Sequence record: PP886230.1 | Direction: 5' to 3' (one strand) | Length of the DNA: 64,000 nt | Part shown: piece by piece, positions 4,105-61,024 of the stretch | Layout of the letters: every line of letters begins with the position of its first letter | Position numbering within the stretch: position 1 is the stretch's first letter | The notes under the pieces: model-generated | The model's input: the letters and a program-made list of their open reading frames with translations, nothing else | Databases searched by the model: none | Told to the model about the DNA's origin: nothing | Position numbers and translations under genes: made by a program

Positions 4105-4368
4105 ATGAATATTCAAGATAGATTACAATTACTGTACACACTTGAACAGGCTGCTTATGATCTTGTTCGAAAAATCTCAGATGAACTACCTAAAGGAACT
4201 AAAGTTCGTGTACGTGAGATGAATTATTTTTCTGGAGTAATTGAAGAACAAGTACTAACAGTGAATAAAGTAACATACTATGAATCTGAGTTGTCTATTC
4301 AGTGTGAATCTGATGATGGATTAATATCATATTATGGAACTGATGTAGATATAGAGGTAATAAAATGA
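4105..4368 (+). CDS. Hypothetical protein
   Basis: Start reassigned to ATG 4105, just after the upstream stop. Confidence 0.6.
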   Translation: MNIQDRLQLLYTLEQAAYDLVRKISDELPKGTKVRVREMNYFSGVIEEQVLTVNKVTYYESELSIQCESDDGLISYYGTDVDIEVIK

Positions 4369-5507
4369 CCCTTTTGCAAATATATGAAGATTTAATGCAC
4401 TTATGTAATACAAACGATGCATTCTTTTATGTGGATCATAAAAGTCCTGCTGGTGGCACGTATCGTGTATTCAGTTATCGTCTAGCATCATACACTGATT
4501 TCATGCAACCAAATGCGTTGGAAACCCGTGGCTCTATGTGGGAAATTGATGAAGAAGGTGAAATGATACGTTGTGCAGCACGTACAATGAAAAAGTTCTT
4601 CAATGCTTACGAGAATCCTGCTACAATGTTCCCTGCTAACACCACATGCGATGACATTGCGGTAGTGATGCCTAAGTTGGATGGTTCGATTATCAGTACT
4701 TACCGTGATAATGATGGTGAGATTCGTTGTAAATCACATACTGCATTGTATTCTGACCATGCGATTAATAGTACTCGACTTATTAACGAGAACCAGAATT
4801 TGTATCAGTACATCGACGAAGCGGAACGTTTAGGTTACACAGTTAATATGGAGTATACAAGCCCAGAGTACCGAATTGTATTACCATATCAGGTAGAACA
4901 ACTGTTTGTACTGAACGTTCGTCATCGTGTGAGTGGTGAGTTGCTATGTGGTAAAGCACTACGTGATAAGTTTCCATGTCTTGCACAGTACAGTACTAAT
5001 ATGACTGGAAAAGATATTCATCACACTTTTCCGGTACGAAATACCTTCCGTGAAAGCGTGGAGGAAGTTCATAAAATGCTTGATATTGAGGGTTTTGTGT
5101 GCATCCTAAATAATGGGACAATGTGTAAAATAAAGACTGACTGGTACAGTTCATTACATCTTACAAAAGATAGTATTATTATTGATTCTCATTTATATGA
5201 AGCAGTATTAAATGGTTCAAGTGATGATTTAAAACAATTGTTCAGTACTGATGAATATGCTATGCAAAAGATATTAAGAATGGAACAATTGGTATTTTCG
5301 TGCTATAATGCATTACAAGATGAAGTAGAAAGCTTCGTCAAGGAACACAAGCACTTGGAGCGAAAGGAATTCGCAATGAAGGTTCAGGAGTGTTTAACTA
5401 ATGAACTGAATCGTCAGGGCTTGGCCTTTGCAATGTATAACAATAAGAAAGTTGATTACAAAGAGACTCTTATAAAATACATGAAAATTGTACTAAAGGA
5501 TTTTTAG
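4365..5507 (+). CDS. rnlA: RNA ligase 1 (T4 gp63/RnlA-like)
   Basis: Nucleotidyltransferase motif I PKLDGS; FSYRLASYTDF...ALETRG; KFFN; EGFV and KIKTDWY motifs; 380 aa. Confidence 0.93.
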   Translation: MTLLQIYEDLMHLCNTNDAFFYVDHKSPAGGTYRVFSYRLASYTDFMQPNALETRGSMWEIDEEGEMIRCAARTMKKFFNAYENPATMFPANTTCDDIAVVMPKLDGSIISTYRDNDGEIRCKSHTALYSDHAINSTRLINENQNLYQYIDEAERLGYTVNMEYTSPEYRIVLPYQVEQLFVLNVRHRVSGELLCGKALRDKFPCLAQYSTNMTGKDIHHTFPVRNTFRESVEEVHKMLDIEGFVCILNNGTMCKIKTDWYSSLHLTKDSIIIDSHLYEAVLNGSSDDLKQLFSTDEYAMQKILRMEQLVFSCYNALQDEVESFVKEHKHLERKEFAMKVQECLTNELNRQGLAFAMYNNKKVDYKETLIKYMKIVLKDF

Positions 5508-6603: not shown

Positions 6604-7536
6604 ATGCCAACTATTACACTAACAGTTGGATTACCTGGGTGTGGTAAAACCACATGGGCAGTTCAAGAAATTAAAAATGCCAAATCCAAGACTATCAACA
6701 TCAACCGTGATGATATTCGTGAATCTATGGCTGGGTCACATGATGCTTACAAATTCAACGATGCTAATGAGCAGTACGTAACTAATTTACAGTTCAGTGC
6801 AGCAAATTCAGCAGCAGAGAATGGTTGGAACATCATCATATCCGATACAAACCTTAAACAACATTTCCGTAATCTCTGGAAAGTATGGGCTAAAGATAAT
6901 GGTTATGATTACAAAGAAAAGAACTTCTATGATGATTTTGTACCTAATGAAGACCGTGGTGCAGATGTTCATGAATTCTTTAAGATTAAAGAGTTCGTAA
7001 AACTTTGTAAGAAATATAACCTCCAGCGTGAGCGTTCAGTACAAGATGATATCATTGACACAATGGCAGATACGTACTATTATAGTAAGGCATTGCACAT
7101 TGGTTACTATGGTAATTCACGAGAAGCTGCTATTATCGTTGATATTGACGGTACTCTTGCTCATAAATGGGGTCGTAATCCTTACGATGAAAGTACTGTT
7201 CTTCAGGATACACCTGATGAAGAAGTTATTTTGTCTATTATCGCTGAAGCAGTTTTTCATAAACGCAAGATTATCGTCATGAGTGGGCGTACTGAAGGGT
7301 GTCGTGCTGATACCGAACAGTGGCTTAAGAATTGGGGTGTTCCTTACGATGCATTGTTTATGCGAGATATCGATGATAAACGTCCTGATGATGTTGTAAA
7401 ATTCGACCTGTACATGAAAAATGTGGTTGATCATTACGATGTTAAAAAGGTATATGATGACCGAGCACAAGTCGTATTCATGTGGCGTAAGCTACTTGGC
7501 TTGAAAGTTTTTCAAGTTGCAGAAGGAAATTTCTAA
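6604..7536 (+). CDS. pseT: Polynucleotide 5'-kinase/3'-phosphatase (T4 PseT-like)
   Basis: N-terminal P-loop GLPGCGKT and INRDDIRE; HAD motif DIDGT; YDDRAQVVFMWR; 310 aa. Confidence 0.95.
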   Translation: MPTITLTVGLPGCGKTTWAVQEIKNAKSKTININRDDIRESMAGSHDAYKFNDANEQYVTNLQFSAANSAAENGWNIIISDTNLKQHFRNLWKVWAKDNGYDYKEKNFYDDFVPNEDRGADVHEFFKIKEFVKLCKKYNLQRERSVQDDIIDTMADTYYYSKALHIGYYGNSREAAIIVDIDGTLAHKWGRNPYDESTVLQDTPDEEVILSIIAEAVFHKRKIIVMSGRTEGCRADTEQWLKNWGVPYDALFMRDIDDKRPDDVVKFDLYMKNVVDHYDVKKVYDDRAQVVFMWRKLLGLKVFQVAEGNF

Positions 7537-11987: not shown

Positions 11988-12215
11988 ATGAAAGTAATTC
12001 AAGTTATGGTAGAAAAATACCAAACTGAAGATGGTCGTATTTTTGATTCAGCTAAACAAGCTGAACACCATGAACGTATTATTTCGGGTGCACGTAAAGT
12101 ATGTCCTACATGTAATGGAACACAACAAGTACCGTCAGAAGATTACCGCAGCTTTTATGCTTGTCCACACTGTGATGGGAAAGGCTACGTAGAAAAACAA
12201 GAGGTATGGAAATGA
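11988..12215 (+). CDS. Small protein with a DnaJ-type Zn finger
   Basis: CPTCNGT and CPHCDGKG (CxxCxGxG repeats). Confidence 0.7.
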   Translation: MKVIQVMVEKYQTEDGRIFDSAKQAEHHERIISGARKVCPTCNGTQQVPSEDYRSFYACPHCDGKGYVEKQEVWK

Positions 12216-12625
12216 AATTGTATTGCTTAACTAATATGTACTGCCAAGGTGTCCAAGCTGGTATTCAAGCATTCCATGCTGGTGTTAAACTAATTAAAGA
12301 ATATGAAGGTACTGCTTTCAGTACTATTATTGATGAATGGTACTATGAACACGAAACTATTGTAGTACTAAATGCTGGTGGACATGATAAGTTAAATTCT
12401 TATTATAACAACCTTAGCAAACAGGGAAAAGTTCCGTTTGCCAAATTCAATGAAGCTGGATTGAATGATGCTATTACCTGTGTGGCAGTACTGTGTACGT
12501 CTGAAATGATTGAAGACATGGCTGTTATGCGTATGAATCTTCCTGCTGGTGATCAACTAATGCAAGTAAAATATGGTGCATTGTTTGACACATTAAAAGC
12601 AATCAGCACAATGAGGACTATTTGA
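12212..12625 (+). CDS. Peptidyl-tRNA hydrolase 2 (PTH2)-like protein
   Basis: GVQAGIQAFHA (cf. GKxAAQxxHA), WxxxxxTIVVLN, FNEAGLNDAITCVAV. Confidence 0.55.
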   Translation: MKLYCLTNMYCQGVQAGIQAFHAGVKLIKEYEGTAFSTIIDEWYYEHETIVVLNAGGHDKLNSYYNNLSKQGKVPFAKFNEAGLNDAITCVAVLCTSEMIEDMAVMRMNLPAGDQLMQVKYGALFDTLKAISTMRTI

Positions 12626-19585: not shown

Positions 19586-20021
19586 GGAAAGTAAATGTAT
19601 TTCACAAAAAGTTGGTTGTGTTATTGTCAAAAATAATCGAGTATTGAGTACTGGATACAATGGTACTCCATCAAAACAACCAAATTGTTGTGATGTGAAT
19701 CAACACTTAGTCAATGATGGACGTTTTCAAGACTGGGTTAGTGATGAAGCAAAGCATGAACATCATGAGTGGAGTAATATTCATGAAATCCATGCTGAAA
19801 TGAACGCTTTACTCTATAGTTCTCCTACTGAACGTCAAGGTGCTACTCTTTACACAACACTACAACCATGTTATACTTGTTCTAAGTTGATCGCAGGTAG
19901 TGGGATTTCACGTGTAATTTATCTCAAAAATTATCCTCGTACACCACCAGAAGCTATTAAAGTACTGGAAGATGCTGGAATTATTGTTAATTGCATTTAT
20001 GATAAGGGTCTTGATAAATGA
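19542..20021 (+). CDS. cd: dCMP deaminase
   Basis: KVGCVIV, STGYNGTPS, HAEMNAL and PCYTC Zn motifs. Confidence 0.93.
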   Translation: MKHTTWLKIAEVVAEESKCISQKVGCVIVKNNRVLSTGYNGTPSKQPNCCDVNQHLVNDGRFQDWVSDEAKHEHHEWSNIHEIHAEMNALLYSSPTERQGATLYTTLQPCYTCSKLIAGSGISRVIYLKNYPRTPPEAIKVLEDAGIIVNCIYDKGLDK

Positions 20022-20275
20022 CAGTAATAATTATTATTGCTTTTCTAATAACAGTGTTTTTCATTTTTATGTTATATATAGTTGCTATGGATGAACCTAA
20101 TACTTCTTTTCGAAATTATGAAGTTCGTTTTTCTGCACAAAATAATAAGTACTATATTGTAAACTGTATACACCGTAGTGAGAAAAGGGTAACAAGTAGA
20201 TTTGGATTTACCATTTATTATAAAGACCGAGTAGAAGCTGATATGATTTGTCAGAAGCTTAATACGGTAGAATAA
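20018..20275 (+). CDS. Membrane-anchored hypothetical protein
   Basis: N-terminal hydrophobic helix; ATGA overlap. Confidence 0.6.
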   Translation: MTVIIIIAFLITVFFIFMLYIVAMDEPNTSFRNYEVRFSAQNNKYYIVNCIHRSEKRVTSRFGFTIYYKDRVEADMICQKLNTVE

Positions 20276-20305
20276 AAAAAAAGGAGCCATAAGGCTCCTT
20301 TTTTG
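20273..20305. terminator. Bidirectional terminator between convergent genes
   Basis: A-run-GGAGCC-ATAA-GGCTCC-T-run. Confidence 0.85.
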
Positions 20306-20683
20306 TTAACCAGGGAGGTTGCAATAATACAAATCCCAAGGGTGATATTTCATCGCACCAGTACTCAATTTAATTTTATGAAACTGGAATGATTCGGCAA
20401 ATGCACTATCGTCAATCTTAATACAAAAAGTGTTTTTGGCTAGAGTTGGTGCAATTTCCAATGCTGTTTTAGATGCATCTAATCTAATTTTATCTTTATC
20501 ATAACTAGTGATAGTTACAAAACGATAAACATTAAAATCAGTATCAATGAGATCGTAAACACAACTAGAACGTTGATTAAAGATGTTCAAGTTATATTTC
20601 AATTCACCGTTTATATTAGCTGCGGTTACACAAAACCCGCCGATATTGAATGGTAGTTTACCTTGTGCTGCGATAGCTTTCAT
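20306..20683 (-). CDS. Hypothetical protein; the only supported minus-strand gene
   Basis: AAAAAGGAAA SD on the - strand; ends at the bidirectional terminator; no competing + strand ORF. Confidence 0.75.
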   Translation of the reverse strand: MKAIAAQGKLPFNIGGFCVTAANINGELKYNLNIFNQRSSCVYDLIDTDFNVYRFVTITSYDKDKIRLDASKTALEIAPTLAKNTFCIKIDDSAFAESFQFHKIKLSTGAMKYHPWDLYYCNLPG

Positions 20684-20753: not shown

Positions 20754-20782
20754 TTGACAAAACATCAGTGGTATGATATGAT
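20754..20782 (+). promoter_or_regulatory. Sigma70-type promoter
   Basis: TTGACA-17-TATGAT with TGA extension. Confidence 0.65.
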
Positions 20783-20908: not shown

Positions 20909-21517
20909 ATGAAAAGACTATGGCTTGAAGTGATACAAGCAGCGATGTTTCTATTGTTAATAAATTTTCCAGCCAGTGCTGGTATTGAAAGTAAAAATGT
21001 GATAAAGTATAATCCTGAAACCCGAAATGTATATTTCATATCAGATATTACAGATGGGTCACTCAAGAGAATGATAGAGTTGTATGATAAAGAACACTAT
21101 GATACCATCACAATTACATCTCCTGGTGGTGATTTTGATGCAGGTATTCGAATGGCAAACTTTGTTAGAGACAATGGGATAAATTTAATTGTTTCTAGGT
21201 ATTGCAATTCAGCATGTACTGTGGTATTCTTTAGTGTATCTCCCGAAAAGCGATATATGACAAATCGCTCAGTACTGGGTCTTCATAACATTTCGATTAA
21301 AAGTAATGTTACTGATGGTGATAATTCATTTGTGTCTGTAAGACAGCTATCAACTTTTACCGAAGAAATGGCAACAAAGGTAGGTTTCCTTTTTTCACTA
21401 TATGCAGCAAATGGAATCCCACCAGAAGTTCTATTTAGAGTTAGTCGTTCTCGTGGTGAAGATGTTGTAATATTAACAAAACCAGAACTGGTTTTTTACG
21501 GTTCAGTCAAACAATAA
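20909..21517 (+). CDS. Exported ClpP/crotonase-like serine peptidase
   Basis: Signal peptide-like N-terminus ending ASA; ITSPGGDF, CNSAC (putative Ser nucleophile) and LGLHN. Confidence 0.65.
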   Translation: MKRLWLEVIQAAMFLLLINFPASAGIESKNVIKYNPETRNVYFISDITDGSLKRMIELYDKEHYDTITITSPGGDFDAGIRMANFVRDNGINLIVSRYCNSACTVVFFSVSPEKRYMTNRSVLGLHNISIKSNVTDGDNSFVSVRQLSTFTEEMATKVGFLFSLYAANGIPPEVLFRVSRSRGEDVVILTKPELVFYGSVKQ

Positions 21518-21587
21518 AAATAATTAAAATAACAGGATGATTATGATGTACTTCCTTTGTTATTAATTATATTGAGATTATATAACT

Positions 21588-21848
21588 ATGACAAACATCC
21601 AAAACTTGACATCTATTATTTTTTATGCTACTGTAGTAATGTATGCTACAGTTATTTTTCTAACAGTTTTCATTTACAAAGATTATCGTAATGGCTTTAT
21701 TGATCCAACTACAATGAAGTTCAATTCAAAATTCGAAGCAATAATTTATTATGTACTATCAACTTCATACTTGGTGTGCCTAATGTTGTTAGGAGCACTA
21801 ATTTATATCTTATACACAACATTATTTGCAATTGGAGCTATTTTATGA
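21588..21848 (+). CDS. Two-helix membrane protein
   Basis: Two long hydrophobic segments. Confidence 0.6.
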   Translation: MTNIQNLTSIIFYATVVMYATVIFLTVFIYKDYRNGFIDPTTMKFNSKFEAIIYYVLSTSYLVCLMLLGALIYILYTTLFAIGAIL

Positions 21849-22438
21849 CCTGTATTATTGCACACACTGACGGAGTAAGTTCTTTTATTGCTGGGGATAA
21901 GTTAGGAAGCAATGGATTTACAAAAACTGTTCAAACTGAGCCAAAGGTATTCGAGAAAGAATTTATCAAGTTACATGATGATGGACTAACTAGAACTAAA
22001 GAAGTAATGGCATTGGGTTATACTACATCATTTCGTATGGGTCAGTTGTTAAATTATAACCTTAATTTACCTGAACAAGATGCTAGTCAAACATTTTCAC
22101 AATATTTGGTTCTTAAAGTTATTCCAATCATTCGTCAAATGTTTAAAGAAGAATGGGGTGCACGAGATGCATCACAAGATGTAGGTGGTGGACAATTTAT
22201 CATTCTCCACAATCATACAATCTATGAAGTTCAAGAAGACTTTTCAGTACTACAACCTAAAACAAGAATTACCGCAGTAGGTAGTGGGACATATCATGCA
22301 ATTGCAGCAATGCAAGCATATATTGAAGTTGAGAACGAATCTAAAAAACCACTACACGAACGTATCAAATCAATTTTTAAAATTGTTAGTGATAATGTAA
22401 CAAGCGTAAGCGAAGAGTTTGATGTTTTAAAATATTAA
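21845..22438 (+). CDS. HslV/proteasome-beta-like Ntn threonine protease
   Basis: True start ATG 21845 (ATGA overlap, GGAG SD) gives M-T1-CIIA; FIAGD, Lys near position 32 (EPKVF) and AVGSG match the HslV catalytic layout. Confidence 0.75.
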   Translation: MTCIIAHTDGVSSFIAGDKLGSNGFTKTVQTEPKVFEKEFIKLHDDGLTRTKEVMALGYTTSFRMGQLLNYNLNLPEQDASQTFSQYLVLKVIPIIRQMFKEEWGARDASQDVGGGQFIILHNHTIYEVQEDFSVLQPKTRITAVGSGTYHAIAAMQAYIEVENESKKPLHERIKSIFKIVSDNVTSVSEEFDVLKY

Positions 22439-22465
22439 AAGTACTAATATTATAAGAGAGAATAG

Positions 22466-22660
22466 ATGATGGCATACACAATTTATGAATGGGTTTTGAG
22501 TTTTTTTATAGTTTTTTCTATTGTTGTAATTTATAACAATGCTAAATGCTTATATAGGGACTTGAAATCCAATGGTTATCACAAAGATAATAATTTTATG
22601 TATGCCTATCATATTGGAATCATTCTGTTATTATCAATATATTTAATTGTTTTTTTATAA
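22466..22660 (+). CDS. Small membrane protein
   Basis: Two hydrophobic segments. Confidence 0.5.
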   Translation: MMAYTIYEWVLSFFIVFSIVVIYNNAKCLYRDLKSNGYHKDNNFMYAYHIGIILLLSIYLIVFL

Positions 22661-22669
22661 GGATTGAAT

Positions 22670-23422
22670 ATGATATCAGAAAAATTTATAAGCAATGAAG
22701 GTAAAAAGCGATTACTGATTATATCAGGTGCAGGACTTTCTGTTGAAAGTGGTATGGAACCTTTTCGATTTGATGATGGTTTGTGGGATACATTTAAAAT
22801 TAATGATGTATGTAACATTGCTAGTTTAACTACGAAATATCACGTTGTTCATTCCTTCTATAATACATTACGTGTAAAATTGGGTCAATGCAAACCCAAT
22901 GCAATGCATTATTTTATAAAATCGTTAGAAGATCAATATGGTGATTGCTTCCTTCATATGACTTCTAACATGGACGATCTTTATACTCGTATTGGTGGTC
23001 ATGAGCTTAAACTTCATGGAAACTTGTGCGAAGTTATTGAAAATTATAGTATCAATTCCGATGATTATAATGTTATTAACTGCGGATACGAACCATACAT
23101 ACCAAAACATGATGTTTTTGCCAAACCAAATGTAGTAATGATTGGAGAATATCATCGTTATGTTGATGGTATTCGCTTACCAATTTACGAAGAACGAAAT
23201 AATGTGTTGAAATCTCTTAATGAAAATGATACAGTTATTGTAATTGGTAGTAGCGATACAGTACTGGTATGGTCGAGATTAGCAGCAGCATTACCATGTT
23301 ATAGTGTTAATGTTAACATTCGTAAAAATGATAATGATTTTTTGTTTAATGAAAAAGTTATCAAGCCAGCAACCAAAGCAATACCGCATCTAGAGACTAT
23401 AATTAAGGAACGTATGAAATGA
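22670..23422 (+). CDS. Sir2/CobB-family NAD-dependent deacylase
   Basis: ISGAGLSVESG, FR...GLW, PNAMH, TSNMDDL, LHG, KPNVVMIGE, IGSS. Confidence 0.9.
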   Translation: MISEKFISNEGKKRLLIISGAGLSVESGMEPFRFDDGLWDTFKINDVCNIASLTTKYHVVHSFYNTLRVKLGQCKPNAMHYFIKSLEDQYGDCFLHMTSNMDDLYTRIGGHELKLHGNLCEVIENYSINSDDYNVINCGYEPYIPKHDVFAKPNVVMIGEYHRYVDGIRLPIYEERNNVLKSLNENDTVIVIGSSDTVLVWSRLAAALPCYSVNVNIRKNDNDFLFNEKVIKPATKAIPHLETIIKERMK

Positions 23423-23970
23423 GTGTTAAAGAAGTTCCCTTTGGTGAATATGGCACACGTGCAAATTTTGTATTTTGTTATTTCTTTGCAAGAAAATGCA
23501 ACCCTTACAAAAACTATGAGTTGAATGATATACCAGAAGTAAATTTAGTATTACTGCAATTACGATGGGATGGTCTTCTTGGTGGATGTGGTGGAACCGT
23601 AGAAAGTACTGATATCTCACTAGAAGATGCGTTGCGTCGTGAAGTTCAAGAAGAAATGGATTACAATATTTTTGTTTCCCATCTTCGACCACTCAAAACT
23701 TTTGAAATTTACCCAGGTGCAAACAGTCACAGTTTTAGCTATGAAGTAACCTATGACGAGTTGAAACACATTAGAGATGGATACACTAATGCTAAACATG
23801 CAAGTGCAGAAGTTGCTGGTGTAAATTTATGTCATATTTCGCGTTATTCTAAGGGACAAAATCGAGAAGCGGGATATAATAATCTTATGACACAGAACTT
23901 CATCGGTACAGCAAAACAAGAATTGGAGTATCTTGTTCAAAAAGAAAACTTACTAATTAGTTATCTATAG
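23419..23970 (+). CDS. Nudix hydrolase, NUDT16-like
   Basis: LQLRWDGLLGGCGGTVE, LEDALRREVQEEM (Nudix box), AKHASAEVAG and QNFIGTAKQEL parallel NUDT16 segments recalled from memory. Confidence 0.75.
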   Translation: MSVKEVPFGEYGTRANFVFCYFFARKCNPYKNYELNDIPEVNLVLLQLRWDGLLGGCGGTVESTDISLEDALRREVQEEMDYNIFVSHLRPLKTFEIYPGANSHSFSYEVTYDELKHIRDGYTNAKHASAEVAGVNLCHISRYSKGQNREAGYNNLMTQNFIGTAKQELEYLVQKENLLISYL

Positions 23971-23979
23971 GAGTTTAAC

Positions 23980-24300
23980 ATGTCTTACTCAATGTTTTTG
24001 GATGATATTCGTGATGCAAATCTATATTATCCAAACCAAGATATGGTGGTATGTCGTGACTTTAAAAGTGCATGTGAATATGTTATTGAAAATGGAATTC
24101 CAGCATTTGTATCATTCGACCATGACTTGGGTGATGTGAGCGAAGACGAAAAGACTGGATATTCTTTTGCTAAGTTTCTTATTGATTATATGTTTGATAA
24201 TAATATTAAAGAACCGTTTGAGTACTTTGTTCACAGTAGTAATCCTGTTGGTAAAATTAATATTGAAACATACTTAAACAATGGATTTAACTCATTATGA
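23980..24300 (+). CDS. Cyclic-phosphate-processing receiver-like domain protein
   Basis: FLDDIR, SFDHDLG, GYSFAKFL and VHSSNPVG motifs. Confidence 0.7.
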   Translation: MSYSMFLDDIRDANLYYPNQDMVVCRDFKSACEYVIENGIPAFVSFDHDLGDVSEDEKTGYSFAKFLIDYMFDNNIKEPFEYFVHSSNPVGKINIETYLNNGFNSL

Positions 24301-24599
24301 TTCAAACACACATCAAAAGTCTTATTTGTACTGTTCTGTTAGGTGCAGGAGTTCTTTGGTTCGGACAGTATCACGAGAACACTAAGCGTACCAACATTCA
24401 CTACAATACCGCAGAAGTTGTTAGTTTAGGACAATGTAGCGAGTCCAAATGTTCATTTATGTATAAAACCCAAAGTGGTGAAGTACGTAATGGACTATCA
24501 AGAGAACCAGTTTCAATTGGTCAACTTGTTTACCAGGAGTGCTGGGAAGAAAAGGTTCGAGGTTCACGTTGCTATGTTGAATACGAACCAAATATGTAA
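24297..24599 (+). CDS. Membrane-anchored Cys-containing protein
   Basis: N-terminal TM segment and several Cys in the soluble part. Confidence 0.6.
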   Translation: MIQTHIKSLICTVLLGAGVLWFGQYHENTKRTNIHYNTAEVVSLGQCSESKCSFMYKTQSGEVRNGLSREPVSIGQLVYQECWEEKVRGSRCYVEYEPNM

Positions 24600-24659
24600 T
24601 AATCCGAGTCAATAACATTAGTCGAGTACAAGGATGTACTCATAACTCAAGGATGTTTT

Positions 24660-26099
24660 ATGAAAAAATATACAATTGACACAAACGTACTACTATCTGA
24701 CCCTAATGCATCTATTGCTTTTGATGGTGCTGCAATCATTCTACCATTTACAGTACTGGAAGAATTGGATTCAATTAAGAGTCGTAATGTAGATGTTTCA
24801 CGCGATGCTCGTGTTGCTATTCGTAACATTGAAGCAATTATTGCAGATGCATCACATGATGAGATTAGTAGTACTGGTGTTAATATTGCTGATGTTCATA
24901 CCAATATGAATCCTGATAGCAAATTGTTTGTTATTACAAACGAAGAAGCTGAAGCACTAATTCGTACTAAAGGTTCAGAAGAGAAAGTTCAAACCCTTCT
25001 CAAAAGCACAGTACCTGATGATAAAATCATTCTGGTAGCTTTAGCAACAGAATCAGTACTGGTAACTCGTGATATCAACATGCGTATCAAAGCACTAAGT
25101 TATGGTGTCGAGGTACAAGATTATCGCCATGATATTGTTATTGGTGATAGTGATTTGATTCACATTGGTCAACACCATTTGGAAATTAATTTTTGGGAAG
25201 TATATAGCAACTTATCCAATACTAATATTCAATCCGAACAAGTTGGTCGTCGTTTGTATCATTACATTTCTAAAAGCTTGATTGAACATTTGCTTCCACA
25301 AAATCTATGCATCGGTGATTATCTATATGATGATGCAGACGTATTATTTGTGTACGAAGGTCAATCAGCAATTGAGGAAGATGATGGAACACTAACACCA
25401 GAAGATATTTTGGTATTCCAAGATATTGGACAATCAGTAGCTTTACGTGCTAAAGTATGGGATATTAAAGCAAAGAATATCCAACAAGCACTCGCCATCA
25501 ACAGTATTCTCGATCCTGATGTACATCTAACAGTACTGCTAGGTTCTGCTGGTACTGGTAAAACACTAATTACGATTGCTACTGCATTAGAATTAGTACT
25601 GGAAAAACGTAAATACGACCGAATCATCTTCTCTAAAACTCAAGACTCACAGTTTGAAGATATTGGTTTCTTGCCAGGTTCAGAAGCAGAAAAAGTGATT
25701 CCATTCTGTGGAGCCGCAATTGACGCGTTAGAGTTTCTTCATAAAGATGATGCTAACCCTCAAGGTAGTATTGAAGAGATTATGAAACGTAATGTTATTC
25801 AATTTAAAGCACTAAACTTTGTACGTGGACGTTCATTCACCAACACTATTCTAGTAGTTGATGAATTCCAAAACATTACACCTGCACAAGCTAAAACAAT
25901 CTTGACACGAGCAGGATTAAACTGTAAAGTAGTAATTATGGGTAACTTGAGTCAGATTGACAGTAAGTTTATTAGTCCTGTTAACAGTGGTTTGACATAT
26001 GTAACTGAGAAGTTTAAAGATTGGGCAGGTTGTCGTGTCATCGAACTAGAAGGTGTTGTTCGTTCACCACTTGCAGAATTTGCTGAAGAAAATATGTAA
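24660..26099 (+). CDS. phoH: PIN domain-PhoH ATPase fusion
   Basis: PIN motif IDTNVLL...VLEELD...DDKI...TRDINMR; Walker A GSAGTGKT; RGRSF; VDEFQN; GNLSQID. Confidence 0.93.
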   Translation: MKKYTIDTNVLLSDPNASIAFDGAAIILPFTVLEELDSIKSRNVDVSRDARVAIRNIEAIIADASHDEISSTGVNIADVHTNMNPDSKLFVITNEEAEALIRTKGSEEKVQTLLKSTVPDDKIILVALATESVLVTRDINMRIKALSYGVEVQDYRHDIVIGDSDLIHIGQHHLEINFWEVYSNLSNTNIQSEQVGRRLYHYISKSLIEHLLPQNLCIGDYLYDDADVLFVYEGQSAIEEDDGTLTPEDILVFQDIGQSVALRAKVWDIKAKNIQQALAINSILDPDVHLTVLLGSAGTGKTLITIATALELVLEKRKYDRIIFSKTQDSQFEDIGFLPGSEAEKVIPFCGAAIDALEFLHKDDANPQGSIEEIMKRNVIQFKALNFVRGRSFTNTILVVDEFQNITPAQAKTILTRAGLNCKVVIMGNLSQIDSKFISPVNSGLTYVTEKFKDWAGCRVIELEGVVRSPLAEFAEENM

Positions 26100-26356: not shown

Positions 26357-26460
26357 TTCATTTGAAGACATATTGTGGAGTTCTTAATAAATACTTTTAT
26401 AAGAATAATAATACTTTTTATTAAATTAAAAAGAACTCCATGTGTTATTTCAGTTTTTCG

Positions 26461-26486
26461 TCCCTGTCTTTTGGCAGGGATTTTTT
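26461..26486 (+). terminator. Rho-independent terminator
   Basis: TCCCTGTC-TTTT-GGCAGGGA-T6. Confidence 0.8.
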
Positions 26487-28153: not shown

Positions 28154-28333
28154 ATGAAATTTTTACTTGTACTAATCGCAGTTCTTATGGTATTATCTTG
28201 TTCAGTTAGTAATGGTTCATACATTTACGTATCAGTATTTGAAGAAGCTCCCGACAACTGTGTATTAACTCACACTGGAATTGTGTTAGTTAATGGTAAA
28301 CCATCAATCGAGTACTTATGTATAGGTGATTAA
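28154..28333 (+). CDS. Small predicted lipoprotein (59 aa, not in ORF track)
   Basis: MKFLLVLIAVLMVLSC lipobox-like signal; TAGGA SD. Confidence 0.55.
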   Translation: MKFLLVLIAVLMVLSCSVSNGSYIYVSVFEEAPDNCVLTHTGIVLVNGKPSIEYLCIGD

Positions 28334-28336
28334 ATT

Positions 28337-28567
28337 ATGAAATTATTATATATTTTTATTATTTCTTCTATTGTATTTCTGAGTGGATGTGCTCCTAAAG
28401 TTGATGAGATGGATGCTGAAATCATCCGTCAAGGTTTAACAAAACTAAATCACCAAGGAACACTATACGCATGTCATACTATGCGTCATGGGCAAGATCT
28501 TAATCTCATGTGCAGGAAGATTGTGAATCGCAAACGTCTTAATACTGTTCCGAAGGATGCACAATGA
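28337..28567 (+). CDS. Small predicted lipoprotein
   Basis: Lipobox FLSGC. Confidence 0.65.
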   Translation: MKLLYIFIISSIVFLSGCAPKVDEMDAEIIRQGLTKLNHQGTLYACHTMRHGQDLNLMCRKIVNRKRLNTVPKDAQ

Positions 28568-42158: not shown

Positions 42159-42560
42159 ATGACTACAGTTGATGATATCTACAGCACTATACGCAATATG
42201 AGTACAGATAGAAAAGTATTTGGTGATAAAGAAAAATCTAAGTGTTATGGTATTGATTCTTTTGATATAATTTCTTATGAGTACAACACGAGTGGAAATA
42301 GTTCACTGAATATCGTCTGCCCTCGTGACCCAGAAAATAATTTTATGTATGTTGAAATTAATAATGATGGAATATTTTTTACAAAAGTTTTTAAAGGTGG
42401 AATTAATTACGAACCAATTGAATGTATGAATGAAGAAACTTTCTTTCAAGAAGATACAATTATCAATTTAGGTTTTAGTTTTGATGATTATAAAACATTA
42501 GAACATGACTTTAATCGTTATTATAACGGTTTCTTAAAGGAGTTAACAATTTATCTATGA
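42159..42560 (+). CDS. Hypothetical protein (EHFQ-motif family)
   Basis: MNEETFFQEDTIINLG. Confidence 0.6.
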   Translation: MTTVDDIYSTIRNMSTDRKVFGDKEKSKCYGIDSFDIISYEYNTSGNSSLNIVCPRDPENNFMYVEINNDGIFFTKVFKGGINYEPIECMNEETFFQEDTIINLGFSFDDYKTLEHDFNRYYNGFLKELTIYL

Positions 42561-43789
42561 ATAACCAATATGTTGAACAAACAATAGTGAAACACTTGGC
42601 TGGGTCACAAGCCTACGGAACCAGTACACCTGAAAGTGATACTGATTATCGTGGTATTTTTCTTGCTAATAAAGAATTTATTCTTACGCCATTCTATAAG
42701 GTCAAAGAAGTAGCTGATAAAAATGAAGAAGATACTAAATTCTATGAGTTAAATCAGTATTTAAAATTATACACTGAAGCCAACCCTAATATATTGGAAT
42801 CACTATGGGTCGATCCAGAACACATTGTAGAAAGTACTGAGATTTATGACTATCTTCGTTCATTTAACCAAAAACTTCTTAGTTCCAAGATTGCATTTTC
42901 ATACACTGGATATGCATATAATCAGATTAAGCGTATGACAAATCATCACGGTTGGATGGATAAAGAGCGTATTGCTGAAAAACGATTAAATGAGATTTTA
43001 GAAGAACACCCTGTCGATGAGGTTCTTGCGTGGATGTATGATTCATTCCCACAGTATCTTGTTGAACGTTTAGATACATCCAACTTACATCCATTTAATG
43101 CTAAAAAGATTGATTTTGAAAAATATATGCGTGATACGTCATTGCAGTTAGTTTCGAAAAATCCATTAAAGCAATATCATTTTGTAAGATTAGTGCATAA
43201 CTACACTACTGAAAAAATTCTTGATCGTGATTTCAATTTATTGAATTTTAATAATGGTTATGAACTAATTCATTACGGAGAAAACATTTTTGCGATTATT
43301 AAAAATCCGAATGAAAGCACTATCAACGGTGATGGATCATTGCGTTATTTTTCTAAAGAGCGTAGTACTGAAGAGTTGAAAACCAAACCAGAACTAATTG
43401 TCAAATTTAACGAAAAAGAATATCAGGAAAATAGTGAGAATAGGAAAAGTTATCATAAATGGAAAGAAAATCGTAATGCCAAACGTGCTATTTTAGAATC
43501 ACAACACGGATACGATTGTAAACATGCTATGCACACAATCCGACTTTTGAATAGTGCAGAAGAAGCATTACAAAGTGGAATTATTCAAGTTAAACGACCA
43601 GATGCACAAATGTTGATGGATATTCGTAATGGTAAATGGAAGTATGAAGAAGTATTAGAATATTTCGATGATAAAGTACAATACATTCGTGATGTTCTAT
43701 ATAAGAAATCAGTACTTCCTAAAAAACCAAACATCAAGTTAGCATCAAAAATTATCATTGATATTAGAGAAATGCAATGGTATAAGTAA
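42557..43789 (+). CDS. Pol-beta-superfamily nucleotidyltransferase (RlaP/YcgL-like)
   Basis: GSQAYGTSTPESDTDYRG (GS...DxD); ANPNILESLW; GYDCKHAMHTIRLL. Confidence 0.8.
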   Translation: MNNQYVEQTIVKHLAGSQAYGTSTPESDTDYRGIFLANKEFILTPFYKVKEVADKNEEDTKFYELNQYLKLYTEANPNILESLWVDPEHIVESTEIYDYLRSFNQKLLSSKIAFSYTGYAYNQIKRMTNHHGWMDKERIAEKRLNEILEEHPVDEVLAWMYDSFPQYLVERLDTSNLHPFNAKKIDFEKYMRDTSLQLVSKNPLKQYHFVRLVHNYTTEKILDRDFNLLNFNNGYELIHYGENIFAIIKNPNESTINGDGSLRYFSKERSTEELKTKPELIVKFNEKEYQENSENRKSYHKWKENRNAKRAILESQHGYDCKHAMHTIRLLNSAEEALQSGIIQVKRPDAQMLMDIRNGKWKYEEVLEYFDDKVQYIRDVLYKKSVLPKKPNIKLASKIIIDIREMQWYK

Positions 43790-59911: not shown

Positions 59912-61024
59912 ATGAAAAAGTATTTGGTTGGTGGCTACGTCCGTGACCGTTTAATGGGTCTTCGTGCAAAAGACAAAGATTATGTCATTGTCGGAGCAAC
60001 TGAATCTGATATTAAGTACTTGCAAAGTATTGGCTATAAGCAAGTAGGTAAGGATTTCCCTGTATATCTAAGTCCAGAAGGTAATGAACACGCATTAGCC
60101 CGTACTGAGCGTAAAACTGGTACTGGATATGGTGGCTTTGAAGTGGATACAAAAGGCGTAACACTCGAACAAGATTTGTATCGCCGTGACCTAACAATAA
60201 ATGCAATTTCGTATGATCCAGTACTACAAATTCATATCGATCCATACGGTGGTAAAGCTGATATCAAGAACAAGGTACTACGTCATGTTTCTGACCATTT
60301 TAAAGAAGATCCATTACGTGTGTTACGTCTTGCTCGATTTGCTACTCGTTATTCTGACTTTACTATCCATGAAAGCACTGAGGAACTCGCTATTGGAATG
60401 GTCAATAGTGGTGAGTTAAATCATCTTGTTCCTGACCGTGTTTTTGTGGAATTCGAAAAAGCATTTTCCGAAGAAAAGCCTGCAAAGTTCCTTAAGACGC
60501 TAAGTAAATTTGGTTATTACGAAAAGGTGTTTAATACATCTTTGACCAAAAAGAATTTAGACCTTATTGATTATATTGCAGAGAACTGTACGGATGTATA
60601 TAAACCATATTTTCTGTGGTCTATTCTTCTTGAAAATGAAGAAGTAAATAATGATTCAGTACTTAACGGTGCTATTAAAGTTCCAGTTAAGTATGTTAAA
60701 TTTAGTAATTATATCAAACGTTTCCGTGATGATATCAAAACATTCCGTAAAAAGACCCCTATTGAAATGGGTAATATTTTATTGGATATGAATATTAAAA
60801 ATAACGGAGGTGAAGAATTCCTTTATAAAGTTTTGGAATACTTCATTTTGCGAAAAGAAATTGATTTAGAACTTGAAGATCTAATTATTAAAGTTTATGA
60901 TCGTTATACTGATGTTGAATTGCCTGATATTCAGCAAATGGTCAAAGATGGTGAACTTGAAACGTCAGAAATTCGTGATTTTGTTTGTGAACTTCGTTAC
61001 GAAGCAATCAAACAAATGTTCTAA
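59912..61024 (+). CDS. cca: tRNA nucleotidyltransferase (class II CCA-adding enzyme)
   Basis: YLVGGYVRD, DKDYV, VGKDFPV, ALARTERKTG, DLYRRDLTINA, EDPLRVLRLARFA. Confidence 0.93.
   Translation: MKKYLVGGYVRDRLMGLRAKDKDYVIVGATESDIKYLQSIGYKQVGKDFPVYLSPEGNEHALARTERKTGTGYGGFEVDTKGVTLEQDLYRRDLTINAISYDPVLQIHIDPYGGKADIKNKVLRHVSDHFKEDPLRVLRLARFATRYSDFTIHESTEELAIGMVNSGELNHLVPDRVFVEFEKAFSEEKPAKFLKTLSKFGYYEKVFNTSLTKKNLDLIDYIAENCTDVYKPYFLWSILLENEEVNNDSVLNGAIKVPVKYVKFSNYIKRFRDDIKTFRKKTPIEMGNILLDMNIKNNGGEEFLYKVLEYFILRKEIDLELEDLIIKVYDRYTDVELPDIQQMVKDGELETSEIRDFVCELRYEAIKQMF

What the first reader, a model, noticed from the sequence alone, without database searches (positions are those of the whole stretch)
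21845..24300. Coupled operon: HslV-like protease, Sir2, NUDT16-like Nudix and cyclic-phosphate receiver
Seen: Sir2 (22670-23422) overlaps the Nudix gene by ATGA, and the receiver-like gene follows 9 nt later. The Nudix matches eukaryotic NUDT16 outside the Nudix box: LQLRWDGLLG vs MQMRFDGRLG; AKHASAEVAG vs AKDHGLEVLG; QNFIGTAKQEL vs NSFIGSAREQL (NUDT16 recalled from memory). Established: NUDT16 decaps RNA and cleaves protein-linked ADP-ribose; sirtuins consume NAD+ and yield acyl-ADP-ribose or transfer ADP-ribose. Inference: a writer/eraser or clean-up module acting on ADP-ribosylated proteins or RNA, NAD-capped RNA, or ADPR-derived immune signals. This could be an undescribed counter-defence system.
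Basis: partly seen in the sequence, partly recalled or inferred. Interest (0 to 1): 0.75.

Follow-up and report, generated by a model that had tools for sequence, protein, structure and literature searches.

The report
Jumbo-phage sirtuin, NUDT16-like Nudix, cREC module
A giant E. coli phage carries a tightly packed gene block (an NAD-consuming sirtuin, a Nudix enzyme of the human NUDT16 family, a small "cREC" phosphoesterase and an RNA nuclease/helicase); the same block was already predicted from genome comparisons to process RNA ends or ADP-ribose derivatives, and no one has tested it.

Summary
In this Asteriusvirus window (100% identical to phage vB_EcoM_E9.1), Sir2 (22670-23422) overlaps the Nudix gene (23419-23970) by ATGA. 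cREC (23980-24300) follows after 9 nt.

The Nudix belongs to the NUDT16 family:
- Pfam Nudt16-like scores 68.6 bits.
- PDB sequence hits reach 3e-12, against 0.05 for generic Nudix enzymes.
- The AlphaFold model's 39 best PDB matches are all NUDT16, X29 or TIRR/syndesmos (TM 0.8).

Sir2-Nudix-cREC-membrane protein-PIN/PhoH is conserved in six Rak2-like genera, and Nudix and cREC are fused in three of the phages examined. The HslV-like gene is not a conserved member.

"Undescribed" is wrong. Iyer et al. 2022 (PMC9503650) described this neighbourhood and predicted NAD+-dependent RNA repair, with the sirtuin acting like Tpt1/KptA. I found no experimental work on it.

- The Nudix has NUDT16 affinity.
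- The phage sirtuin clade lacks the zinc Cys4 motif.
- The "2H" partner in relatives is of the Acb1 family and lies beside NAD+ salvage genes. This phage lacks both at this locus.
- SIR2 is the commonest neighbour of cREC in bacterial genomes.

Best reading: the sirtuin makes an ADP-ribose derivative that cREC and the Nudix dismantle. The target, RNA ends most likely, is not settled. This is a new member of a known but untested kind.

The parts
20909..21517 (+). ClpP/NfeD-like protease with a hydrophobic N-terminus. It is the left neighbour of the block, not a core member.
   Evidence: Pfam CLP_protease 0.0043 and PHROG 26024. A ClpP-like gene sits at the same left border in Hallingskeid, L011-13 and L024.
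21588..21848 (+). 86-aa membrane ORF, ATGA-coupled to the HslV-like gene.
   Evidence: Hydrophobic segments are visible in the translation. The overlap was read. No family hit.
21845..22438 (+). Remote HslV/proteasome-beta-like protein (Met-Thr N-terminus). Lineage-specific insert, not a conserved member of the module.
   Evidence: PHROG 1040 4e-24. NCBIfam HslV 5e-4 over residues 119-170 only. PDB HslV E about 1. Adjacent to the module only here; 67% homologue nearby in Munch. Found in 198 phage records, about 10 kb from Sir2 in the three Epseptimavirus records compared.
22466..22660 (+). 64-aa membrane ORF.
   Evidence: Two hydrophobic segments in the translation. No family hit.
22670..23422 (+). 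Sirtuin of a phage clade. It is CobB/class III-like, keeps the catalytic residues and lacks a conserved Zn Cys4.
   Evidence: PF02146 4e-20. PDB CobB 5e-22. The GAGxS, N/D, His and FYNxxR motifs are kept in 10 phage sirtuins, and no Cys is conserved in the small domain. No PADLOC defence-SIR2 hit. Found in 975 phage records.
23419..23970 (+). NUDT16-family Nudix hydrolase.
   Evidence: PF22327 68.6 bits. PDB NUDT16/X29 3e-12 with the single sequence and 1e-26 with the family profile. AF2 pLDDT 95.5, and the Foldseek top 39 matches are all NUDT16 family (TM 0.8). Metal and phosphate ligands are kept.
23980..24300 (+). cREC (cyclic-phosphate-processing receiver-like) domain protein.
   Evidence: PF20274 80.5 bits. 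D8, D9, R11, D47, H48, D49, S86 and N88 are invariant in 59/59 rows. AF2 pLDDT 96.8 with a four-stranded fold. The match to REC domains is only weak (E 2e-3, TM 0.5-0.59). Fused to the Nudix in BF, GAP32 and Yen9-04.
24297..24599 (+). 100-aa membrane protein (one TM segment, four Cys). Conserved directly after cREC; role unexplained.
   Evidence: PHROG 14661 4e-44. 39-50% identical at the same position in six relatives.
24660..26099 (+). PIN + PhoH (PhoH2-like RNA nuclease/helicase). The most conserved member of the block.
   Evidence: PIN_4 7e-20 and PhoH 7e-44. NCBIfam PhoH2 2e-44, below its cut-off. 68-80% identity in relatives. Kept next to Nudix-cREC even in the distant contigs L011-13 and L024.
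20754..20782 (+). Best sigma-70-like site upstream of the block. Weak evidence.
   Evidence: 11/12 match with an extended -10 TG. Promoter-like sites in the region are not above the shuffled expectation.
26460..26481 (+). The only + strand terminator-like hairpin downstream of the PIN-PhoH gene in the scanned region; an earlier + strand one lies at 21630-21652. Weak evidence.
   Evidence: Nine-pair stem followed by a T run.

Best explanation
This is the Asteriusvirus version of a conserved jumbo-phage NAD+-utilisation module.

Proposed pathway:
1. The sirtuin attacks NAD+, releases nicotinamide and transfers the ADP-ribosyl group onto an oxygen nucleophile of its substrate.
2. The resulting ADP-ribose derivative carries a phosphate, cyclic phosphate or ester on its distal ribose. 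The next two gene products take it apart.
3. cREC opens or removes that distal group, using a receiver/HAD-like Asp-Asp / Asp-His-Asp / His-Ser site.
4. The NUDT16-family Nudix cuts the pyrophosphate, giving AMP and a ribose phosphate.

The favoured substrate is RNA ends. Here the sirtuin would act like Tpt1/KptA on 2'-phosphate or cyclic-phosphate termini left by host ribonucleases, producing ADP-ribose 1''-2'' cyclic phosphate. The PIN-PhoH2 nuclease/helicase would act on the same RNAs.

Shown here: the gene order, its conservation, the Nudix-cREC fusion, family memberships and intact catalytic residues.

Inferred: every chemical step and the identity of the substrate.

I put about 0.6 on 'the sirtuin makes an ADPr derivative that cREC and the Nudix process'. 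I put about 0.3 on the RNA-end target specifically. The stated confidence is for the combined statement.
For: 1. Conserved order. Sir2-Nudix-cREC-TM-PIN/PhoH is found in BF, Yen9-04, GAP32, RaK2, Munch and Hallingskeid. Identities are Sir2 43-62%, Nudix 46-55%, cREC 61-66% and PhoH 68-80%. The metagenomic jumbo phage L024 has the same order.
2. Fusion. Nudix and cREC form one 301-302-aa protein in BF, GAP32 and Yen9-04 and in protein P0013.
3. The Sir2-cREC link recurs independently.
   - rV5-like phages have Rnl1-cREC-Sir2, with a kinase and a metallophosphoesterase beside them.
   - In bacterial genomes SIR2 is the commonest Pfam family among 110 dereplicated proteins within two genes of cREC (7 members). 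Sir2-cREC(-Sir2) is directly adjacent in L113, L118, L124 and L146, and L146 adds a SLOG (YAcAr) gene.
4. RNA links.
   - T5-like phages couple Sir2 to a HAD_SAK_2 'RNA repair' phosphatase.
   - PhoH2 combines a PIN RNase with an RNA helicase domain.
   - The window also encodes Rnl1, Pnkp, an RlaP nucleotidyltransferase and a CCA-adding enzyme.
5. The enzymes look active.
   - The sirtuin keeps its NAD+-binding and catalytic His/Asn/Asp residues and the class III Tyr-x-x-Arg anion-binding pair. It lacks the Zn Cys4 of canonical protein deacylases.
   - The Nudix keeps E75/E78/E79/E131 and R49 (84/84 or 82/84 rows). These match the metal and alpha-phosphate ligands of human NUDT16 in its ADP-ribose complex (PMC6459841, PMC4485890).
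6. NUDT16 cuts the ADPr pyrophosphate whatever the ADPr is attached to (PMC12879935, PMC8883491).
7. This model was proposed independently from comparative genomics (PMC9503650, section 3.7.3).
Against: - No sirtuin is known to act on RNA.
- By sequence the protein is closest to CobB, a protein deacylase.
- The phage's own T4-type Pnkp + Rnl1 pathway should leave no 2'-phosphate to remove (established knowledge of T4 Pnkp).
- PIN nucleases leave 5'-phosphate/3'-OH ends, not cyclic phosphates.
- Outside Rak2-like phages, only 13 of 50 dereplicated viral cREC loci have an end-healing or sealing gene within 5 kb, and 6 within three genes. I had no control for this count. Immediate neighbours are heterogeneous.
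- Bacterial Sir2-cREC pairs sit in defence-island-like settings (WYL, PLD, Fic, restriction-type nucleases, GmrSD) without RNA ligases.
- The '2H' partner in relatives is of the Acb1 (anti-CBASS) family.
- The conserved membrane protein after cREC has no place in the model.
- L011-13 keep Nudix-cREC-PhoH with no detectable sirtuin.
Confidence: 0.4

Rival explanations
1. Protein-directed sirtuin. The enzyme deacylates (acetyl, succinyl) or ADP-ribosylates host or phage proteins during takeover, as CobB and SirTM-type sirtuins do. The Nudix and cREC only dispose of O-acyl-ADP-ribose, or reverse protein-linked ADP-ribose, taking the place of the Macro domain found in other sirtuin operons.
For: The best solved relatives are CobB and SIRT5 (5e-22), with the Tyr-x-x-Arg pair that binds acidic acyl groups. 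NUDT16 removes protein-linked ADPr (PMC8883491, PMC6459841). The F61-equivalent at the active-site mouth is Thr in the window protein; the paper reports that the human F61S mutant processed PARylated PARP1 faster (PMC6459841). cREC has invariant Ser, His and Asp residues that could serve as an esterase site. Bacterial Sir2-cREC pairs resemble sirtuin-Macro writer/eraser pairs.
Against: The clade lacks the Zn Cys4 module of canonical deacylases. It falls far below the NCBIfam CobB cut-offs (85.8 bits against 320). The recurrent RNA-enzyme neighbours (Rnl1, HAD_SAK_2, PIN-PhoH2) are not explained.
Confidence: 0.2
2. Counter-defence by signal destruction. The Nudix and cREC degrade host NAD+-derived or cyclic-nucleotide immune messengers (cADPR isomers, ADPr cyclic phosphate, ADPr-1''-phosphate and the like). 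The locus would be part of an anti-defence island.
For: In BF, Yen9-04, GAP32, Munch, Hallingskeid and L024, an Acb1-family gene lies immediately or closely upstream of Sir2 (PF23474, 56-61 bits scored for BF and Munch; a precomputed Pfam hit in L024). The NadM-Nudix and Nampt genes of a NARP2-type NAD+ salvage pathway lie upstream too; in RaK2, Nampt is confirmed upstream and NadM was not verified. Iyer et al. argue that phage Nudix and Macro domains mainly counter soluble ADPr derivatives (PMC9503650). In bacteria cREC sits among defence-type genes.
Against: An NAD+-consuming sirtuin has no role in this model. This window lacks the Acb1-like gene, Nampt and NadM, yet keeps the block intact. 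Tight linkage to PIN-PhoH2 is unexplained. No window protein hits a known defence-related model in PADLOC beyond weak P-loop matches. Gene adjacency in phage early regions is weak evidence.
Confidence: 0.2
3. RNA 5'-end decapping and decay. The NUDT16-like Nudix removes NAD, ADP-ribose or other nucleotide caps (or pyrophosphate) from RNA 5' ends. This licenses degradation by the PIN-PhoH2 5'-3' helicase/nuclease. The sirtuin and cREC would modulate the cap.
For: X29 and NUDT16 are RNA-decapping enzymes, and NUDT16 binds FAD caps (PDB 6x7u among the top fold matches). Nudix-cREC-PIN/PhoH is the deepest conserved trio. Tpt1-type enzymes can cap 5'-phosphate RNA with ADPr (PMC8883491).
Against: There is no evidence for the sirtuin as a capping enzyme. 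The fusion to cREC points to a small-molecule or phospho-ribose step rather than to RNA binding. The prokaryotic family differs from NUDT16 at base-contacting positions: the Q170-equivalent is Glu in 79/84 rows, and the F57-equivalent is Gly in this protein.
Confidence: 0.1
4. The Nudix works independently of its neighbours to clean the nucleotide pool. It would hydrolyse IDP/ITP (the best-known small-molecule substrates of NUDT16), for instance against ATP-deaminating defences. The neighbours would be unrelated auxiliary genes.
For: NUDT16 is an (deoxy)inosine diphosphatase (PMC4485890). One family member is fused to a Ham1/ITPase domain and lies among purine-synthesis genes. ATP-to-ITP deaminase defences exist (PMC11645235).
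Against: This does not explain the conserved order or the fusion to cREC. In the window protein the Phe of the NUDT16 'GFP' motif is replaced by Gly; that paper ties the motif to the preference for a 6-oxo purine, the contact itself being through the backbone amide (PMC4485890).
Confidence: 0.05

Closest known systems
Sirtuin-centred predicted RNA-repair neighbourhood, type 1 (Serratia phage BF), of Iyer, Burroughs, Anantharaman and Aravind 2022 (PMC9503650)
   Same: Same phage group and same sirtuin clade. The same Nudix, cREC and PIN-domain genes occur in the same order.
   Different: Nudix and cREC are separate genes here. The 2H (Acb1-family) gene and the adjacent NAD+ salvage genes are missing. 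An HslV-like gene and two small membrane ORFs lie upstream instead. That paper does not mention the NUDT16 affinity of the Nudix.
Tpt1/KptA pathway for RNA 2'-phosphate removal, with its cyclic phosphodiesterase (2H) and Macro (Poa1) steps that dispose of ADP-ribose 1''-2'' cyclic phosphate
   Same: The proposed logic is the same: an NAD+-dependent transfer onto a phosphate oxygen, followed by enzymes that open the cyclic phosphate and degrade the ADPr product (PMC8883491, PMC9503650).
   Different: Every catalyst has a different fold: a sirtuin in place of the ART-fold Tpt1, cREC in place of 2H or Macro, and a Nudix added. The analogy is untested.
Eukaryotic NUDT16 / Xenopus X29 (RNA decapping, IDP/ITP, and free and conjugated ADP-ribose)
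   Same: Same fold (TM 0.8) and same family profile. The Nudix-box glutamates, R50, D52, E136, I164 and the S166-equivalent (Thr) are kept.
   Different: About 25-27% identity. In this protein the F57 position of 'GFP' is Gly and F61 is Thr. D132 is His in 59/84 family rows and Q170 is Glu in 79/84. The His24 position could not be aligned. The genomic setting is different.
CobB / SIRT5 (class III sirtuins)
   Same: Best sequence match. The NAD+-binding motifs, the catalytic His and the Tyr-x-x-Arg pair are kept.
   Different: No conserved Zn-binding Cys4. A clade-specific Cys-Asn-Ile motif is present. The scores are far below the CobB equivalog cut-offs.
Sirtuin-Macro (SirTM) writer/eraser operons, and bacterial SLOG-SIR2 NAD+ conflict systems
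   Same: A sirtuin is paired with an enzyme expected to act on its ADPr product. Bacterial Sir2-cREC and YAcAr-Sir2-cREC arrays were found here.
   Different: cREC replaces Macro. The phage block adds a Nudix and PhoH2.
Phage anti-defence genes Acb1 and NARP2 (Nampt + NMNAT-Nudix)
   Same: They are immediate upstream neighbours of the block in related genera.
   Different: They are not present in this window. No gene of the block itself belongs to these families.

Membership tests
NUDT16 family (Pfam PF22327 Nudt16-like) | Score above the family's gathering threshold and above generic NUDIX | tested here: met
   68.6 bits against a cut-off of 27. Generic NUDIX scores 30.3 bits.
NUDT16 family (Pfam PF22327 Nudt16-like) | Nudix-box catalytic glutamates, plus the extra metal ligand E136 and the phosphate-binding R50/D52 | tested here: met
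   E75, E78, E79, E131, R49 and D51 align to those positions. They are present in 76 to 84 of 84 rows. Residue roles come from PMC4485890 and PMC6459841.
NUDT16 family (Pfam PF22327 Nudt16-like) | Base-pocket residues of vertebrate NUDT16 (F57 of 'GFP', Q170, I164, S166, H24) | tested here: inconclusive
   I162 is kept and T164 replaces Ser. The F57-equivalent is Gly here (Phe in 64/84 rows). The Q170-equivalent is Glu (79/84). H24 was not alignable by HMMER.
NUDT16 family (Pfam PF22327 Nudt16-like) | NUDT16-type fold rather than a generic Nudix fold | tested here: met
   Model pLDDT 95.5. The Foldseek top 39 PDB matches are all NUDT16, X29, TIRR or syndesmos (E down to 8.6e-15, TM about 0.8). 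The next Nudix scores 4.7e-7 with TM below 0.6.
NUDT16 family (Pfam PF22327 Nudt16-like) | Hydrolysis of IDP, ADP-ribose or RNA caps | not testable with these tools
   No activity data found.
Sirtuin (Pfam SIR2), class III / CobB-like | NAD+-binding Rossmann motifs and the catalytic His, Asn and Asp | tested here: met
   PF02146 72.9 bits. The motifs are conserved in 10 phage sirtuins.
Sirtuin (Pfam SIR2), class III / CobB-like | Tyr-x-x-Arg pair of class III | tested here: met
   FYNxxR is present in all 10 aligned phage sequences.
Sirtuin (Pfam SIR2), class III / CobB-like | Cys4 zinc-binding module | tested here: not met
   No conserved Cys in the small domain of the phage clade. Bacterial CobB-like neighbours of cREC do keep CxxC...CxxC.
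Sirtuin (Pfam SIR2), class III / CobB-like | NCBIfam CobB equivalog cut-off | tested here: not met
   85.8 bits against a cut-off of 320. It is a Sir2-family member, not a CobB equivalog.
cREC (Pfam PF20274) | Score above the gathering threshold, and the conserved acidic/His/Ser positions | tested here: met
   80.5 bits against 27. D8, D9, R11, D47, H48, D49, S86 and N88 are present in 59/59 rows.
cREC (Pfam PF20274) | Receiver-like fold | tested here: inconclusive
   The model is confident (pLDDT 96.8) but has four strands. The best PDB matches are all REC domains, but they are weak (E 2e-3, TM 0.5-0.59).
cREC (Pfam PF20274) | Cyclic-phosphate or ADPr-derivative phosphoesterase activity | not testable with these tools
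   Predicted only (PMC7824862, PMC9503650).
HslV / proteasome-beta Ntn hydrolase | N-terminal Thr nucleophile after Met | tested here: met
   The translation starts Met-Thr.
HslV / proteasome-beta Ntn hydrolase | Curated family thresholds (Pfam Proteasome, NCBIfam HslV) | tested here: not met
   No Pfam hit. NCBIfam scores 19.9 bits against 137. PDB HslV has E about 1. Only PHROG 1040 matches, at 4e-24.
Sirtuin-centred predicted RNA-repair neighbourhood, type 1 (PMC9503650) | Sirtuin of the phage clade linked to Nudix, cREC and a PIN endoRNase | tested here: met
   Genes at 22670-26099 in the same order as in Serratia phage BF.
Sirtuin-centred predicted RNA-repair neighbourhood, type 1 (PMC9503650) | Linked 2H phosphoesterase | tested here: not met
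   No homologue of the BF or Munch 2H (Acb1-family) gene in the 64-kb window. Escherichia is not among the listed host genera of the 325 phage records that match it.
PhoH2 (PIN + PhoH RNA helicase/nuclease) | PIN and PhoH domains in one protein | tested here: met
   PIN_4 72 bits and PhoH 150 bits. The NCBIfam PhoH2 equivalog cut-off is not reached (152 against 680).

The most novel reading that the evidence does not exclude
The phage sirtuin is a nucleic-acid enzyme. It would be a non-ART, Tpt1-like NAD+-dependent RNA 2'-phosphotransferase or RNA ADP-ribosyltransferase. The receiver-fold cREC would be a new class of hydrolase acting on its ADP-ribose (cyclic) phosphate product. The NUDT16-like Nudix would complete a self-contained pathway that bacteria also use in Sir2-cREC conflict systems.
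Probability: 0.27. Interest if true: 0.8.

Novelty: new member of a known kind. Interest (0 to 1): 0.36.

Why it matters
If the model holds, sirtuins would join Tpt1 as enzymes that use NAD+ on RNA, and the receiver fold would gain a catalytic role outside two-component signalling. It would also show how large phages keep translation running, or manage NAD+-derived molecules, under host attack.

As it stands, the locus is a clean, compact example of a module found in many jumbo phages. Its Sir2-cREC core also occurs in several bacterial phyla. The module has a published prediction and no experimental test. The NUDT16 affinity of its Nudix gives a solved-structure framework for reasoning about substrates.

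The finding itself is not a discovery. The genes are already annotated in GenBank (Sir2, nudix hydrolase, HslV family peptidase) and the neighbourhood is in the literature.

Tried and rejected
Searches that led nowhere:
- The search for related loci with the broad Nudix alignment failed because no stretch was conserved enough. With the narrow alignment it returned only 121Q and RaK2.
- The first genome scan with the broad cREC alignment failed in the same way. A narrower alignment worked.
- The listing of cluster members gave no names or taxa for ten Nudt16-like representatives.
- The word-indexed protein search for the Nudix found only close relatives.
- The promoter scan was not above shuffled expectation.
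- There are no tRNA genes and no Rfam matches in the window.
- PADLOC gave nothing for the core genes.
- The 248-aa protein upstream of the Nudix in L011-13 is not a detectable sirtuin.
- Pfam on the immediate viral neighbours of cREC showed no dominant family.
- Literature searches found no experimental study of the phage sirtuin, the Nudt16-like Nudix or cREC in the held library. The NARP3 paper is unrelated.

Ideas rejected:
- That the HslV-like gene is a core member.
- That the sirtuin is a defence-type SIR2 NADase (its catalytic His and deacylase-type motifs are kept).
- That ATGA overlap by itself shows functional coupling (the base rate is about 17%).

Not settled: whether Asteriusviruses encode any Nampt elsewhere. 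None appears among the best 45 hits, which reach down to 36% identity.

Full report
**Identity of the window.** The region 21500-24700 is 100% identical to Escherichia phage vB_EcoM_E9.1. It is 94-99.8% identical to PBECO4, 121Q and other Asteriusvirus jumbo phages of about 350 kb. GC content is about 33% and nearly all genes are on the + strand.

**The observation.** ORF listing and direct reading confirm every coordinate.
- The genes are the HslV-like gene (21845-22438), Sir2 (22670-23422), Nudix (23419-23970) and cREC (23980-24300).
- Sir2 and Nudix share ATGA. Nine nucleotides separate Nudix from cREC.
- Two more ATGA overlaps extend the chain. An 86-aa membrane ORF runs into the HslV-like gene at 21845, and cREC runs into a 100-aa membrane ORF at 24297.
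- The chain is followed by a PIN + PhoH gene (24660-26099).
- ATGA overlaps are frequent in this genome, at about 23 of 133 annotated junctions by hand count. The overlap alone therefore says little.

**Family assignments.**
- Pfam gives SIR2 (4e-20), Nudt16-like (8e-19, ahead of generic NUDIX at 5e-7), cREC_REC (1.5e-22), and PIN_4 + PhoH.
- Against solved structures the Nudix matches human NUDT16 and Xenopus X29 at 3e-12 to 9e-12, and TIRR/syndesmos at 1e-7. Ordinary Nudix enzymes score 0.05 or worse.
- A profile of 84 family members raises the NUDT16/X29 match to 1e-26, against 4e-11 for the next Nudix.
- The AlphaFold model (pLDDT 95.5) has NUDT16, X29, TIRR or syndesmos as its 39 best PDB matches (E down to 8.6e-15, TM about 0.8). 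The first generic Nudix follows at 4.7e-7.

**Active-site residues of the Nudix.** I mapped the residues described for human NUDT16 (PMC4485890, PMC6459841) onto the alignment and counted columns in the family.
- Kept: the metal ligands (E75, E78, E79 and E131, each 84/84), the alpha-phosphate Arg (R49, 82/84) and its Asp partner.
- Changed in this protein: the Phe of the 'GFP' motif is Gly (Phe in 64/84 rows) and the mouth residue F61 is Thr.
- Changed in the family: Q170 is Glu in 79/84 rows.
- The family is small, with 476 representatives at E of 1e-3 or better among 1.84 billion proteins.
- Its members are fused to cREC, Ham1/ITPase, HD and NMNAT-like domains.

**The sirtuin.**
- It is closest to CobB (5e-22).
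- An alignment of ten phage sirtuins shows all NAD+-binding and catalytic motifs and the class III Tyr-x-x-Arg pair. It shows no conserved zinc-binding cysteines.
- It matches no defence-type SIR2 model and falls far below the CobB equivalog cut-offs.
- Relatives occur in 975 phage records.

**cREC.**
- It has no solved relative by sequence.
- Its confident model (pLDDT 96.8) is a four-stranded alpha/beta domain that resembles receiver domains only weakly.
- Eight positions (D8, D9, R11, D47, H48, D49, S86, N88) are invariant in 59 diverse homologues.

**The HslV-like protein.** The likeness is remote. PHROG 1040 matches at 4e-24, the NCBIfam HslV match is far below its cut-off, and Pfam gives no hit.

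**Conservation.**
- Sir2-Nudix-cREC-membrane protein-PIN/PhoH is kept in the same order in Serratia phage BF, Yersinia phage Yen9-04, Cronobacter phage GAP32, Klebsiella phage RaK2, Salmonella phage Munch and Erwinia phage Hallingskeid. Protein identities range from 43% to 80%. A metagenomic jumbo phage, L024, has the same order.
- Nudix and cREC are one fused protein in BF, Yen9-04 and GAP32.
- More distant contigs (L011-13) keep Nudix-cREC-PIN/PhoH without a detectable sirtuin.
- The HslV-like gene is next to the block only in Asteriusvirus. It lies a few genes away in Munch and is absent from the locus elsewhere. In the three Epseptimavirus records compared it lies about 10 kb from the sirtuin.

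**What lies upstream in relatives.**
- In BF, Yen9-04, GAP32 and Hallingskeid the upstream genes are a NadM-type NMNAT-Nudix, Nampt and a 148-aa 2H protein. In Munch and RaK2, Nampt is seen upstream, and Munch also has the 2H protein.
- The 2H proteins of BF and Munch score above threshold for the Pfam Acb1 (anti-CBASS) family.
- None of these is in the 64-kb window. No Asteriusvirus appears among the best 45 Nampt matches.

**Prior description.**
- Iyer et al. 2021 named cREC (PMC7824862).
- Iyer et al. [quoted passage not shown] They also described two other sirtuin contexts, with T4-type RNA ligase + cREC + kinase, and with a Swiss-army-knife HAD phosphatase.
- They proposed that the sirtuin acts like KptA/Tpt1 on RNA 2'-phosphates, with the partners resolving cyclic phosphates or degrading ADP-ribose cyclic phosphate (PMC9503650).
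- I verified the other two contexts. rV5-like phages have Rnl1-cREC-Sir2 with a kinase and a metallophosphoesterase beside them. T5-like phages have Sir2-HAD_SAK_2.
- I found no experimental work on these proteins.

**New contextual evidence.**
- cREC is abundant in viral contigs, with at least 565 loci.
- Of 50 dereplicated loci, 13 have an RNA end-healing or sealing gene within 5 kb and 6 have one within three genes. I had no control for this count. Immediate neighbours are heterogeneous.
- cREC occurs in bacterial genomes of Campylobacterota, Hymenobacter, Paraburkholderia and others.
- There, SIR2 is the commonest Pfam family among 110 dereplicated proteins within two genes of cREC (7 members). 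WYL regulators, PLD nucleases, Fic and restriction-type nucleases follow.
- Sir2-cREC(-Sir2) is directly adjacent in four loci and involves two sirtuin classes. One locus reads SLOG (YAcAr)-Sir2-cREC near a GmrSD gene.
- The Sir2-cREC partnership is therefore general. This supports the idea that cREC handles a sirtuin-made ADP-ribose derivative, whatever the sirtuin's target.

**Mechanism.**
- I commit to a module in which the sirtuin consumes NAD+ and produces an ADP-ribose derivative. cREC and the NUDT16-like Nudix then dismantle it to AMP and ribose phosphate.
- In relatives, the neighbouring Nampt and NMNAT-Nudix genes could close the cycle back to NAD+. That step is inference.
- RNA ends are the favoured target. 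The reasons are the recurrent RNA-enzyme neighbours, the PIN-PhoH2 partner and the atypical sirtuin.
- The case is weak on several points. No sirtuin is known to act on RNA. The phage's own Pnkp + Rnl1 should not leave 2'-phosphates. Bacterial contexts look like conflict systems without ligases. The conserved membrane protein is unexplained.
- The rivals remain open: a protein-directed sirtuin with by-product clean-up, destruction of immune signals, RNA decapping feeding PhoH2, and inosine-nucleotide sanitation.

**Verdict.** This is a new member of a known, computationally predicted and experimentally untested kind. Interest is moderate to low for the finding as such. It would be high only if the sirtuin-on-RNA reading proved true.

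Noticed in passing
window 28154-28376 (compare L001 12652-14179): Relative to PBECO4, the window lacks about 1.5 kb carrying a WGR-domain gene and its neighbour. About 220 bp of different sequence stands in its place. WGR is a PARP-associated domain, so this is another NAD+/ADPr-themed gene that varies among Asteriusviruses.
   Followed up: partly
window 4365-5507, 6604-7536, 12212-12625, 42557-43789, 59912-61024: RNA-repair and tRNA-maintenance genes are scattered through the window: T4-type RNA ligase 1, polynucleotide kinase, a PTH2-like hydrolase (2e-5), an RlaP 'RNA repair pathway' nucleotidyltransferase (3e-16) and a CCA-adding enzyme. No tRNA genes or Rfam matches occur in the window itself.
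   Followed up: partly
window 61135-61533 and 62364-62840: A second, generic Nudix (PF00293, 1e-12). Close by lies a gene annotated as 'phosphatase' with a sub-threshold Macro-domain match (E 0.009, 16.4 bits against a cut-off of 22).
   Followed up: no
window 24297-24599: A 100-aa protein with one N-terminal membrane segment and four cysteines. It is conserved directly after cREC in all six related genera (39-50% identity) and is often start/stop-coupled to it. It has no place in any cytoplasmic nucleotide or RNA model.
   Followed up: partly
L004 3507-3953, L007 3407-3853, L024 4366-4815: The '2H / RNA ligase' gene just upstream of Sir2 in related jumbo phages scores above threshold for the Pfam Acb1 (anti-CBASS) family. 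It scores below threshold for 2'-5' RNA ligase. This bears on whether the published RNA-repair reading of that gene is right.
   Followed up: partly
L146 2704-4309; L113, L118, L124: Bacterial arrays of SLOG (YAcAr)-Sir2-cREC and Sir2-cREC-Sir2 lie in defence-island-like surroundings (GmrSD, DUF1643). Two different sirtuin classes flank cREC.
   Followed up: partly
L121 2906-4309; L119 4001-4777: Bacterial proteins of 467 and 258 aa carry a cREC domain, C-terminal in the first and N-terminal in the second. The rest of each protein has no Pfam match.
   Followed up: no
L026 4001-5176: A Ham1/ITPase-Nudt16-like fusion protein lies among purine-biosynthesis genes (adenylosuccinate synthase, SAICAR synthase). 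This suggests an inosine-nucleotide cleaning role for some cellular family members.
   Followed up: no
L018 5294-5806: In a T5-like record, the gene after Sir2 is annotated as a second 'Sir2'. It is in fact a HAD_SAK_2 phosphatase domain protein (4e-20), so the public record is mis-annotated.
   Followed up: yes
phage records MH494197 (CMSTMSU) and KR296694 (Salmonella phage 40): The Nudix match is split into two pieces in the first record and three in the second. This suggests one and two reading-frame breaks, or sequencing errors, in those deposited sequences.
   Followed up: no
window 20277-20304: A perfect 12-bp GC-containing hairpin flanked by A and T runs lies between convergent genes (20018-20275 on +, 20306-20683 on -). 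It looks like a bidirectional terminator.
   Followed up: no
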